Positions 477 through 64,000 of a stretch of DNA of 64,000 nt are shown piece by piece. Source of the DNA: Ophelia neglecta (Eukaryota); contig OZ260662.1 of the NCBI GenBank assembly GCA_965285935.1, positions 88,102,001 through 88,166,000 of the forward strand. Direction: 5' to 3'. Made by a program: the position numbers and the translations under genes. The first letter of the stretch is position 1, and each line of letters opens with the position of its first letter. The notes beneath the pieces were generated by a model that was given only the letters and a program-made list of their open reading frames with translations, did not search any database and was not told the origin of the DNA.

Positions 477-1265
477 GGGCGATGGCCACAATGGAGGAAA
501 ATGGTGCAAGACTCAGGTGGTGAAGGACGTGCCGATGATGGTGAATGAGACCGTGGAGACCGAGGTACATTACGTTCCCTGTGACGAGGCGGCGTCCAAG
601 GGCTGGAAGGTCATCTCACGGAAGTTCAGCGCCAACGCCGAATACTGTACCGTGCTCAGGTAGGTCTCTCATCTAGTGTTATAGTTATTCAATTGATCCA
701 GCAGTAATAGGTTTGTTACTCTAGTTCTGAAAGTAGAATAGAATCTAGAACTTATTTGTATGATAACGGAGGCAGTTATCAGTCACCACAGCCTGGAACC
801 AATTAAAATACAGCAGCACATTTATTATTTTGAAGATCTTACGTAAGGTTTCTTTTTTTGTAAAAAAAAAGTTGAAATCCTAAAAGGACAAGCCTCTCTT
901 TTTGTAGTAGTTTGTCTTGGACAGTATAGAATTGAGGTCTAAAGAAAGTTCCTCTCATTGGTCAAGCAACATTCTTAGGCAGTAAATATTGAATAAAAGT
1001 GGTTTATGGCACGTAATGGTGGGCGGAGTTTCACTGTCGTCACACCTTTTGACATTTAACCTGTCTTGTGATAGGCCGGAGACACACGAAGTGCTGCGTA
1101 ACGTGTCGCAGACGCTGACTGAGTACCGGTGCTGTGACGGGTGGCAAGGGTCCAACTGTGACGTTGCCCTCTGCATTACGCCCTGTCAGAATGGAGGAAG
1201 CTGTGTGGGCCCCAATCAATGTAGCTGCATTAAAACGCAGTACACTGGGGACTACTGCCAAACTC
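477..1265 (+). CDS. Exons 477-659 and 1075-1265: EMI domain and first EGF repeat
   Basis: Spliced: [10 protein letters not shown]...HYVPCDE...[35 protein letters not shown] (EMI-type Cys pattern ending CCxGWxGxxC), then [19 protein letters not shown]...YTGDYC. Confidence 0.75.

Positions 1266-64000: not shown

What the first reader, a model, noticed from the sequence alone, without database searches (positions are those of the whole stretch)
477..64000. A >11,000-aa 'discoidin-beaded' gel-forming mucin-like polypeptide
Seen: one continuous spliced frame with EMI-EGF5-D1-D2-D'-D3, a Cys-rich mosaic, and at least 32 complete discoidin-like domains (8 unique plus 2 in each of 12 repeat exons), each spaced by Thr-rich tracts. 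It is still open at the window end. Established: D1-D2-D'-D3 is the polymerising head of VWF and MUC2/5/6. Vertebrate mucins interrupt PTS tracts with CysD domains. F5/8C domains occur in SCO-spondin, insect hemolectin/hemocytin and the sea-star adhesive Sfp1, normally in small numbers. Inference: here a divergent discoidin fills the CysD-like role at very high valency, giving a megadalton multivalent mucus, adhesive or matrix polymer.
Basis: partly seen in the sequence, partly recalled or inferred. Interest (0 to 1): 0.85.

Follow-up and report, generated by a model that had tools for sequence, protein, structure and literature searches.

The report
Giant mucin-like gene with discoidin beads
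The window holds most of one huge invertebrate mucus-type gene in which sugar-carrying threonine-rich stretches alternate with at least 24 near-identical copies of a very divergent discoidin-fold domain. This is an unusual variant of a known protein class, not a new kind of system.

Summary
An independent splice-aware model gives one in-frame chain of about 82-87 exons from 477 to 37266. It joins in phase to 12 complete 1683-nt repeat exons (39178-62989) and a 13th that is still open at 64000, about 11,100 codons in all. Pfam confirms five EGFs, three VWD-C8-TIL assemblies with a D' TIL, and a TIL/VWC/LDLa mosaic. EMI is only weakly supported. The repeat domain has no Pfam match, but an AlphaFold model (pLDDT 86.8) matches only discoidin/FA58C structures, so "divergent discoidin" holds at fold level. 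I could verify 24 array domains and 5 of the 8 unique ones; three unique modules stay unverified. A decayed extra repeat copy (37363-38847) is frameshifted and must be skipped. Exons of the array vary 2-6 times less than its introns and carry no indels, which argues for a live gene. The annelid Dimorphilus gyrociliatus has the same bead-and-PTS array ending in a cystine knot, annotated only as hypothetical fragments. Lang et al. 2016 already noted F5_F8 domains in lophotrochozoan mucin-like proteins. Verdict: a new variant of a known kind. The CysD-like cross-linking role is untested inference, and no transcript evidence exists.

The parts
477..1265 (+). Exons 1-2: EMI-like module (split over two exons) and EGF 1. 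The first exon starts at an acceptor in phase 1, so the signal-peptide exon lies upstream of the window.
   Evidence: DP model. EGF_2 E 4e-5; EMI PF07546 only E 0.024, covering profile positions 55-69 of 69.
2772..3869 (+). Exons 3-5: EGF 2-5.
   Evidence: EGF_PEAR1L E 4.5e-17; EGF E 1e-6 and 2.3e-5.
4133..6296 (+). D1 assembly: VWD1 (4133-5275), C8-1 (5405-5651), TIL1 (5941-6094) and an E-like exon (6204-6296). It carries a CGLCG motif.
   Evidence: VWD E 1.8e-8 and 2.1e-10; C8 E 1e-14; TIL E 1.3e-8. Exon chain.
6470..9511 (+). D2 assembly: VWD2 (6470-8105, probably including exon 7382-7460), C8-2 (8317-8505), TIL2 (8740-8861) and E-like exons (9238-9511). VWD2 starts with GDPH.
   Evidence: VWD E 6e-5 to 2.6e-4; C8 E 1.2e-15; TIL E 1.5e-7. 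Exon variants.
9686..10012 (+). D': a TIL' exon and an E' exon.
   Evidence: TIL E 9.8e-5; exon chain.
10135..12470 (+). D3 assembly: VWD3 (10135-11029), C8-3 (11533-11689), TIL3 (11935-12084) and E3-like (12374-12470). VWD3 starts with GDPH and carries CGLCG.
   Evidence: VWD E 4.9e-11 and 7.3e-13; C8 E 1.1e-15; TIL E 1.4e-9. MUC5B, MUC5AC and MUC2 D3 at E 1e-52 to 1e-51.
12671..14987 (+). First short PTS tracts with small Cys-rich modules: LDLa-like (12910-13020), TIL/cEGF-like and VWC-like.
   Evidence: Per-exon translations. cEGF E 2e-4, TIL E 0.011.
15112..17527 (+). Unique bead domains U1 (15112-16335, 3 exons) and U2 (16514-17400, 4 exons). Both are members of the repeat-domain family, and a PTS follows.
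   Evidence: Family HMM built from A4 gave per-exon E of 6e-8 (U1) and 2.5e-6 (U2), with the HMM positions in the right order. F5_F8_type_C E 0.081.
17695..21844 (+). Three Cys-bounded modules, U3-U5, each ending in a K-A-C motif. Their discoidin nature is NOT verified.
   Evidence: No Pfam hit at E<=10. hhalign against the family gave probability 6%. No PDB sequence match.
21959..33300 (+). Cys-rich mosaic made of repeated PTS / TIL / VWC-like / LDLa units.
   Evidence: Ldl_recept_a E 1.5e-5; VWC E 3.2e-6, 2e-5 and 1.3e-3; TIL E 5.5e-7 and 1.6e-6. No TSP1 and no WxxW.
33633..34364 (+). U6: a more canonical FA58C-like domain in 3 exons.
   Evidence: F5_F8_type_C E 0.0026, 18.3 bits against a cut-off of 28.2. 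Lactadherin C2 E 0.0014.
34651..37266 (+). PTS exon, then bead domains U7 (34908-35497) and U8 (35960-36936), then the last unique PTS exon (37132-37266, donor in phase 1).
   Evidence: Family HMM E 3.6e-16 (U7) and 1.6e-9 (U8). Exon chain.
37363..38847 (+). Decayed copy of the repeat ('copy 0'), about 97% identical to the array. It has -7, -1 and +1 indels and lacks the first 191 nt. It is a probable pseudo-exon inside the 37267-39177 intron.
   Evidence: Alignments. The only in-frame way in uses acceptors scoring -6.1 and -2.1, against 2.75 +/- 1.5 for model acceptors.
39178..62989 (+). Array of 12 complete repeat exons. Each is 1683 nt (561 codons, phase 1-1) and is separated from the next by an intron of about 328 nt, giving a period of about 2011. 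Exon starts: 39178, 41189, 43200, 45210, 47230, 49241, 51252, 53263, 55274, 57285, 59296, 61307. Each exon reads PTS - domain A - PTS - domain B - PTS. In the first exon, domain A is 39438-39881 and domain B is 40194-40643.
   Evidence: All 12 are open and 98.0-99.8% identical. A and B are 58% identical. AlphaFold model pLDDT 86.8; Foldseek hits are discoidin domains. Exon pi is 0.003-0.009 with no indels, against intron pi 0.020 with indels.
63318..64000 (+). 13th repeat exon, cut off by the window end and still open.
   Evidence: 227 codons without a stop.

Best explanation
The window holds the 5' roughly 11,100 codons of a single very large gene for a secreted, polymerising, mucin-like glycoprotein of an invertebrate. 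The donor organism was not identified; a spiralian is the best guess.

Shown:
- The N-terminal part is EGF x5 followed by three VWD-C8-TIL assemblies with a D' between the second and third. This is the module set that disulfide-links VWF and MUC2/5AC/5B into polymers.
- A TIL/VWC/LDLa mosaic with short PTS tracts and eight unique globular modules follows.
- After that comes a tandem array of at least 12.4 nearly identical exons. Each encodes two PTS tracts and two copies of a 148-150-aa domain with one Cys at each end and a discoidin (FA58C) beta-sandwich fold.

Inferred:
- The PTS tracts (about 147 Ser/Thr per repeat) are densely O-glycosylated and extended.
- The discoidin-like beads are compact, non-glycosylated nodes held by one disulfide. 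They give the polymer many identical weak binding sites (for glycan, lipid or matrix, as in other discoidin domains). That would cross-link chains or anchor them to surfaces, in the place where vertebrate mucins use CysD.
- The missing C-terminus probably ends in VWC plus a cystine knot for tail-to-tail dimerisation, as in the Dimorphilus homologue.
- The array is kept uniform by concerted evolution, while selection keeps the exons intact.
For: - Pfam on single exons: EGF, VWD, C8, TIL, VWC and LDLa.
- The D3 exon matches MUC5B/5AC/2 and VWF.
- An in-frame exon chain exists with consensus splice sites.
- All 12 repeat exons are open, with symmetric phase 1-1.
- The repeat exons have no in-frame start with a signal peptide, so they cannot stand alone (reading).
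- The motif S-G-V-N-T-L-T-P occurs in two unique PTS exons and in every repeat exon, which ties the two parts together.
- Family members U1, U2, U7 and U8 lie in the unique part.
- Fold: AlphaFold pLDDT 86.8, pTM 0.83. The Foldseek matches at E <= 0.001 are all discoidin domains, and nearly all further listed matches are too. Weak F5_F8_type_C hits occur in 3 of 27 family members.
- Selection: exon pi is 0.003-0.009 with no indels, against intron pi 0.020 with 12 gapped columns.
- Dimorphilus gyrociliatus has a >20-kb array of two alternating bead types with PTS, ending in TIL/VWC - PTS - bead - cystine knot.
- Lang et al. 2016 report the F5_F8 domain as characteristic of lophotrochozoan mucin-like proteins.
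Against: - There is no transcript, proteomic or expression evidence.
- The signal peptide and C-terminus lie outside the window.
- The exon model is ab initio and unstable at several junctions: 82 to 106 exons depending on the intron penalty.
- The repeat domain fails Pfam's F5_F8_type_C threshold (13.7 bits against 28.2), and TM-scores are only 0.44-0.64.
- The amplified A and B copies have lost the Trp of the R-P-x-G-x-G-W motif that the unique copies and the Dimorphilus copies keep. Their binding function may therefore differ or be lost.
- No ligand or cross-linking test was possible.
- D2 has T-G-L-C-G rather than C-G-L-C-G.
- Among variable codons, 24 change the amino acid and 16 are silent. 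Constraint within the array is therefore seen mainly as absence of indels and lower diversity, not as a low dN/dS.
Confidence: 0.7

Rival explanations
1. The protein belongs to the same family but has a different job. It is the orthologue of arthropod hemolectin/hemocytin and works as a clotting or haemocyte-aggregating factor in body fluid, not as an epithelial mucus or adhesive.
For: [quoted passage not shown] The window has the same order: 3 VWD units, then discoidin-type domains.
Against: Hemolectin-type proteins have two F5_F8 domains and at most a very small PTS. Here at least 29 beads alternate with about 3,100 residues of PTS in the array alone, which is the signature of a gel or adhesive polymer. 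The two extra VWD units of the 3+2 layout are not seen within the window.
Confidence: 0.2
2. There are two or more genes. The head-plus-mosaic gene ends at or before 37266, and the repeat array belongs to a separate transcription unit or is an alternative 3' block that is rarely used.
For: The junction 37266 to 39178 spans a 1.9-kb intron that holds a decayed repeat copy. Read-through of the donor at 37266 meets a stop two codons later. The public Dimorphilus annotation splits its array into several gene models.
Against: The donor and acceptor phases match (1/1) and both sites fit the consensus. Repeat exons have no in-frame initiator or signal peptide. Bead family members and the S-G-V-N-T-L-T-P motif occur on both sides of the junction. 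The Dimorphilus split models are uninterrupted same-strand ORF runs, typical of annotation breaks in repeats.
Confidence: 0.1
3. The array is an assembly artefact, or a dead and decaying repeat block, and not coding sequence in use.
For: Units are 98-99.8% identical, introns included. Arrays like this are hard to assemble, and one edge copy is already frameshifted.
Against: Copies differ by private substitutions and intron indels, so they are not simple duplicates of one read. All 12 x 1683 nt are free of stops and indels, while introns carry indels and 2-6 times more diversity. The splice sites are conserved. The same unit type is found in other organisms.
Confidence: 0.04
4. It is an SCO-spondin orthologue (Reissner-fibre type protein).
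For: From my own knowledge, SCO-spondin also combines an N-terminal EMI, three VWD units, FA58C, LDLa and TIL modules. The window shows weak EMI, and shows LDLa and TIL.
Against: No thrombospondin type 1 repeat was found in any exon tested, and no W-x-x-W motif occurs in any model exon. The long PTS tracts and the bead array are not SCO-spondin features.
Confidence: 0.03

Closest known systems
Lophotrochozoan F5_F8-containing mucin-like proteins and insect hemolectin/hemocytin (Lang et al. 2016, PMC4948705)
   Same: Three N-terminal VWD-C8-TIL assemblies are followed by discoidin-type domains, with PTS present. Lang et al. describe the F5_F8 domain as characteristic of Lophotrochozoa.
   Different: Those proteins are described with a few Pfam-detectable F5_F8 domains, with CysD domains inserted nearby, and with a 3+2 VWD layout. 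Here the beads are invisible to Pfam. At least 24 near-identical copies alternate with long PTS tracts. No CysD is present, an EMI-like plus EGF x5 leader precedes D1, and no further VWD is seen within 64 kb.
Vertebrate gel-forming mucins MUC2 / MUC5AC / MUC5B
   Same: They share the D1-D2-D'-D3 head (the D3 exon matches at E about 1e-52), long Thr-rich PTS tracts interrupted by small globular domains, and giant size.
   Different: The interrupting domain is a two-Cys discoidin-fold module, not the ten-Cys CysD. The repeats are whole exons separated by introns, not one giant central exon. The EGF leader and LDLa modules are absent from vertebrate mucins. D4, VWC and CK could not be checked.
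Dimorphilus gyrociliatus locus CAJFCJ010000007.1, about 3.47-3.50 Mb (DgyrCDS6481 and the upstream hypothetical genes)
   Same: The same bead family occurs in a tandem array with PTS spacers. Two bead types alternate. The locus ends in a TIL/VWC mosaic, PTS, one bead and a cystine knot.
   Different: Beads are 29-36% identical to the window's domain A in the two rows aligned and keep the G-W motif. The locus is annotated only as separate hypothetical proteins. Its N-terminal head was not reached, and the assembly has a gap, which I did not fill.
Sea-star footprint protein Sfp1 and similar marine adhesive proteins
   Same: From my own knowledge and the reviews found, they draw on the same domain palette: VWD, C8, EGF and discoidin, in a secreted adhesive.
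   Different: Sfp1 has few discoidin domains and no mucin-type PTS/bead array. No sequence comparison was made here.

Membership tests
Gel-forming mucin | Three N-terminal VWD-C8-TIL assemblies (D1, D2, D3) with D' between D2 and D3 | tested here: met
   Pfam VWD, C8 and TIL hits in the right order on single exons. D3 matches MUC5B/5AC/2.
Gel-forming mucin | Long Pro/Thr/Ser-rich tracts | tested here: met
   Tracts of 72-104 aa with 42-49% Thr and about 10% Ser flank each bead: 262 of the 560 full codons translated from a repeat exon (561 codons long) are PTS.
Gel-forming mucin | C-terminal VWC and cystine-knot dimerisation module | not testable with these tools
   The gene runs off the window at 64000. 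The Dimorphilus homologue ends in a cystine knot.
Gel-forming mucin | Signal peptide | not testable with these tools
   The first exon in the window starts at an acceptor (477, phase 1). No candidate lies in 1-476.
Gel-forming mucin | CysD (WxxW) domains interrupting the PTS. Typical of vertebrate members, but not universal. | tested here: not met
   No Mucin2_WxxW hit in any exon scanned and no W-x-x-W in any model exon.
F5/8 type C (discoidin) domain, Pfam PF00754 | Sequence match at or above the curated Pfam score | tested here: not met
   Domain A scores 13.7 bits and the best unique exon 18.3 bits, against a cut-off of 28.2. 3 of 27 family members hit, best E 2.6e-4. Split domains were tested only exon by exon.
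F5/8 type C (discoidin) domain, Pfam PF00754 | Discoidin beta-sandwich fold | tested here: met
   AlphaFold pLDDT 86.8. Foldseek best hits are factor VIII/V C2, neuropilin b1/b2, DDR2 DS and retinoschisin, with E 1e-4 to 1e-3 and TM 0.44-0.64.
F5/8 type C (discoidin) domain, Pfam PF00754 | One Cys near each end of the domain (the terminal disulfide of eukaryotic discoidin domains) | tested here: met
   There are exactly two Cys per domain, at positions 5 and 152 of 156. The last Cys is invariant and the first is present wherever the row reaches it. Whether the bond itself forms was not checked in the model.
F5/8 type C (discoidin) domain, Pfam PF00754 | Ligand binding through the loop 'spikes' | not testable with these tools
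The A and B copies have lost the Trp of the R-P-x-G-x-G-W motif.
Hemolectin / hemocytin (3+2 VWD) | Three VWD-C8-TIL units, then F5_F8 domains | tested here: met
Hemolectin / hemocytin (3+2 VWD) | [quoted passage not shown] | not testable with these tools
   None occurs between 12470 and 64000. The rest of the gene is outside the window.
SCO-spondin | Many thrombospondin type 1 repeats | tested here: not met
   No TSP1 hit in the exons scanned and no W-x-x-W motif.
EMI domain (PF07546) | Sequence match at or above the curated score | tested here: inconclusive
   Exon 2 matches only the last 15 profile positions (E 0.024, 15.8 bits against 25), and exon 1 has no hit. The domain is split by an intron, and the joined sequence was not searched.

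The most novel reading that the evidence does not exclude
The beads may form a distinct, previously unrecognised discoidin subfamily that acts as a lectin for the protein's own (or a neighbour's) O-glycans. A single polypeptide would then carry both partners of a reversible lectin-glycan cross-link at a valency of 30 or more. That would be a self-gelling or self-healing mucus/adhesive design that replaces CysD in some invertebrate lineages. The family also exists as PTS-less poly-bead proteins (L004) and with His-rich spacers (JGI proteins).
Probability: 0.15. Interest if true: 0.75.

Novelty: new variant of a known kind. Interest (0 to 1): 0.5.

Why it matters
If the gene is expressed as modelled, it is one of the largest mucin-type polypeptides described. 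It is over 1.1 MDa before glycosylation and still incomplete. It shows a way of building a mucus or adhesive polymer that differs from the vertebrate PTS/CysD scheme.

It also defines a discoidin-fold domain family that current Pfam models miss. Only 18 cluster representatives were found among 1.84 billion proteins, so such genes are likely to be under-annotated or split in invertebrate genomes, as in Dimorphilus.

The practical value is better annotation of invertebrate mucins and a candidate module for bio-inspired adhesives. It does not settle a long-standing open question.

Tried and rejected
I defined the array from splice motifs instead.
- Pfam on the whole repeat exon gave no hit even at E<=1.
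- A profile search of PDB sequences with the family alignment gave only weak, non-significant hits. These were Reelin, the PITH domain of TXNL1, and KCMF1.
- The first AlphaFold run, with two sequences, was poor (pLDDT 60.9). I replaced it with the 27-sequence run.
- hhalign of the U3-U5 C-terminal exons against the family gave probability 6%. PDB and Pfam searches of U3-U5 exons found nothing. An alignment of their N-terminal exons with those of U1, U2, U6, U7 and U8 was uninformative.
- A maximum-likelihood tree of 27 domains did not resolve whether A and B are orthologous to the first and second domains of the related two-domain ORFs.
- Protein searches with a D3 exon, with the Dimorphilus C-terminus and with the family alignment gave no named relatives and no hint of the donor organism.
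- One scan of JGI metagenome contigs found nothing.
- Rfam and tRNA scans of the window were empty.
- Literature searches for this architecture found only Lang et al. 2016 and reviews of marine adhesives.
- I rejected SCO-spondin, because there are no TSRs.
- I rejected inclusion of copy 0 as coding exons, because the only way in uses random-grade acceptors.
Everything was searched exon by exon, by reference. Domains split by introns (EMI, U1-U8) were therefore tested only in pieces.
- The run of N in the Dimorphilus locus L006 was left as it is.
- None of the contigs fetched looked human.
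Full report
WHAT IS IN THE SEQUENCE

The window has two compositional parts. Positions 1-37000 have about 36-42% G+C and no skew. Positions 38000-64000 have a constant 46% G+C with strong C-over-G and A-over-T skew. ORF listing shows that the second part is a tandem array with a period of about 2011 nt, each unit holding a 582-codon open frame on the + strand. 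Tandem Repeats Finder missed the array because its longest period is 500.

Using the conserved acceptor (…AATACAG|CT) and donor (CACAGG|GTAATGG), I defined 12 complete repeat exons. Each is exactly 1683 nt (561 codons), each starts and ends in phase 1, and none contains a stop. A 13th begins at 63318 and is still open at 64000. Units are 98.0-99.8% identical, introns included.

THE REPEAT UNIT

Each exon reads PTS - domain A - PTS - domain B - PTS. A and B are 148-150 aa long and 58% identical to each other. Each has one Cys near each end and is Pro-rich (16-17%). The three tracts are 72-104 aa with 42-49% Thr and about 10% Ser, which gives about 147 Ser/Thr per repeat in the tracts.

Across the 12 copies, nucleotide diversity is 0.003-0.009 in the exon parts with no indel at all. 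In the 328-nt intron it is 0.020, with 12 gapped columns. This pattern fits concerted evolution with selection keeping the exons intact. Among variable codons, 24 change the amino acid and 16 are silent, so the constraint shows up as frame preservation and lower diversity and not as a low dN/dS.

THE UNIQUE PART AND THE SPLICED FRAME

I listed all stop-free stretches. I then built a dynamic-programming exon chain using codon log-odds trained on Pfam-confirmed pieces, splice-site weight matrices and strict frame continuity.

- It runs through 82 exons to a donor at 37266 (phase 1), which fits the phase-1 acceptor at 39178.
- Retraining and changing the intron penalty altered a handful of junctions and added probable exons. 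Examples are 7382-7460 in VWD2 and 21373-21522 in U5.
- The models range from 82 to 106 exons and from 4,127 to 4,396 codons for the unique part. The model is therefore approximate, but the continuous frame is robust.
- With 12 x 561 codons and the 227 open codons of the 13th exon, the window encodes about 11,100 residues.

Exons were never joined for any search. Every database or fold query used single-exon references.

DOMAINS OF THE HEAD AND THE MOSAIC

Pfam on single exons gives the following:

- five EGFs;
- VWD-C8-TIL three times, with an extra TIL (D') between the second and third;
- further on, TIL, VWC, LDLa and cEGF-like pieces, separated by short PTS tracts.

The D3 exon 10730-11029 matches MUC5B, MUC5AC and MUC2 D3 at E 1e-52 to 1e-51, and VWF at E 1e-47.

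EMI is only hinted at. Exon 2 matches the last 15 positions of the profile (E 0.024), and exon 1 has no hit.

No thrombospondin repeat and no CysD were found, and no model exon holds a W-x-x-W motif.

IS THE BEAD A DISCOIDIN?

By sequence it falls short. The repeat exon has no Pfam hit at E<=1, and domain A alone reaches 13.7 bits against a cut-off of 28.2.

A profile of A and B, searched against 1.84 billion cluster representatives, found only 18 proteins. From their domains I built a 27-row alignment, A4. With it, AlphaFold gave a confident model (pLDDT 86.8, pTM 0.83).

Foldseek against the PDB returned discoidin domains almost exclusively. The hits include factor VIII and V C2, neuropilin b1/b2, DDR2 DS, retinoschisin, CASPR2 and discoidin II, at E 1e-4 to 1e-3, TM 0.44-0.64 and 9-20% identity. 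The terminal Cys pair is in the position of the discoidin disulfide.

I conclude that the bead has a discoidin fold and forms a very divergent subfamily. It does not meet Pfam's sequence criterion.

THE EIGHT UNIQUE BEADS

- An HMM of A4 run on single exons recognises U1 (15112-16335), U2 (16514-17400), U7 (34908-35497) and U8 (35960-36936). The profile positions come in the right order across their 2-4 exons.
- U6 (33633-34364) looks like a more ordinary FA58C domain (Pfam E 0.0026; lactadherin C2 E 0.0014).
- U3-U5 (17695-21844) share only a terminal K-A-C motif with the family. They gave nothing with Pfam, hhalign or PDB.

I can therefore vouch for 29 domains, not 32.

The unique members and the Dimorphilus copies keep an R-P-x-G-x-G-W motif. 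The amplified A and B copies have lost its Trp.

THE DECAYED COPY

Between 37266 and 39178 lies a further copy of the repeat (37363-38847). It is about 97% identical to the array. It lacks the first 191 nt and carries a 7-nt deletion, a 1-nt deletion and a 1-nt insertion.

The exon finder can thread parts of it into the frame only through acceptors scoring -6.1 and -2.1. Model acceptors score 2.75 +/- 1.5, and random AGs score -3.1 +/- 2.9. I read this copy as a pseudo-exon at the edge of the array, inside a 1.9-kb intron.

RELATIVES

The only named hit is DgyrCDS6481 of the annelid Dimorphilus gyrociliatus. It is 878 aa and consists of a TIL/VWC mosaic, PTS, one bead, and then VWC-like Cys-rich sequence and a cystine knot.

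The 20 kb upstream of it, on the same strand, is a tandem array of two alternating bead types with PTS spacers. The public annotation cuts it into hypothetical proteins of 596, 1760 and 2706 aa. That assembly has a gap there, which I did not fill.

Three contigs of one ENA assembly (ERZ25069296) also carry arrays. One of them has 13 beads back to back, with no PTS spacers between those that share one 1505-codon ORF. JGI proteins carry bead arrays with His-rich spacers.

A tree puts the window's A and B with the ERZ25069296 copies in one well-supported clade, and the Dimorphilus and JGI copies in the other. It does not resolve A/B orthology.

The donor organism of the window could not be identified. 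None of the fetched contigs looked human.

COMPARISON WITH WHAT IS KNOWN

Lang et al. 2016 (PMC4948705) state three relevant points:

- insects have one hemolectin-type protein with three VWD-C8-TIL units, F5_F8 domains and two more VWD units;
- Lophotrochozoa have more mucin-like proteins;
- the F5_F8 domain is characteristic of Lophotrochozoa, with CysD domains inserted nearby.

The gene here belongs to that general kind. It differs in several ways. Its beads are invisible to Pfam. They are amplified to at least 24 near-identical copies that alternate with long PTS tracts as separate exons. CysD is absent. An EGF leader precedes D1.

I found no paper describing such an array.

MECHANISM

Shown: the module set for N-terminal disulfide polymerisation, true PTS tracts, discoidin-fold beads, and intact, constrained repeat exons.

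Inferred: secretion, dense O-glycosylation, C-terminal dimerisation (by analogy with Dimorphilus), and a cross-linking or anchoring role of the beads. The last could work through glycan, lipid or matrix binding, as in other discoidin domains. A purely mechanical or spacer role is equally open.

VERDICT

This is a real and probably functional giant mucin-like gene, and a new variant of a known kind. Interest is moderate. The main open points are transcript continuity, the gene ends, the three unverified modules and the function of the beads.

Noticed in passing
window 22114, 25475, and once in every repeat exon (e.g. 39327, 41338): A conserved non-repetitive motif ([12 protein letters not shown]) is embedded in otherwise degenerate PTS tracts, in both the unique part and the array. 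It could be a processing, glycosylation or recognition site.
   Followed up: partly
L004:4650-11140 (ENA ERZ25069296, ctg22048): Thirteen bead domains lie back to back, with a period of about 440 nt. Ten of them sit in one 1505-codon ORF with no PTS spacers. This is a poly-bead paralogue type without the mucin part.
   Followed up: partly
L002 and L006 (Dimorphilus gyrociliatus CAJFCJ010000007.1, 3472640-3506633): The annelid array is annotated as several separate hypothetical genes (667+, 177, 98, 1760, 596, 2706 and 878 aa) on one strand, so it is probably one mis-split giant gene. L006 has a run of N at about 2450-3100, which I left unfilled.
   Followed up: partly
window 6470-6580 and 10135-10294: VWD2 and VWD3 both begin with G-D-P-H. 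To my knowledge this is the motif of autocatalytic Asp-Pro cleavage in FCGBP and in the MUC2/MUC5AC D4 domains. VWD1 lacks it.
   Followed up: no
window 7892-8105, compared with 5025-5275 and 10728-11029: D1 and D3 carry C-G-L-C-G, but D2 has T-G-L-C-G. The first Cys of the motif is missing.
   Followed up: no
window 37266-37274: If the donor at 37266 is not used, the frame meets a stop two codons later. A short isoform without the array is therefore conceivable.
   Followed up: no
P0004, P0008, P0014, P0016 (JGI metagenome proteins): These are arrays of the same bead family joined by His/Asp/Pro-rich spacers instead of PTS. P0004 and P0008 begin with VWC-like Cys-rich sequence. They look like intron-free transcripts of an unknown animal.
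   Followed up: no
window 39260-40264 (- strand) and the same place in each repeat: Antisense ORFs of 328-334 codons recur in every repeat. They are Val/Gly-rich mirror images of the ACN-rich PTS coding strand, not genes.
   Followed up: no
L001:10485-13072 (- strand): A retroelement lies next to the bead exons of the related contig. It has reverse transcriptase and a tyrosine-recombinase-like ORF, which suggests the DIRS type.
   Followed up: no
window domains A and B, compared with U1, U2, U7, U8 (e.g. 34908-35032): The amplified beads have lost the Trp of the R-P-x-G-x-G-W motif, which the unique beads and the Dimorphilus beads keep. The array copies are the derived form.
   Followed up: partly
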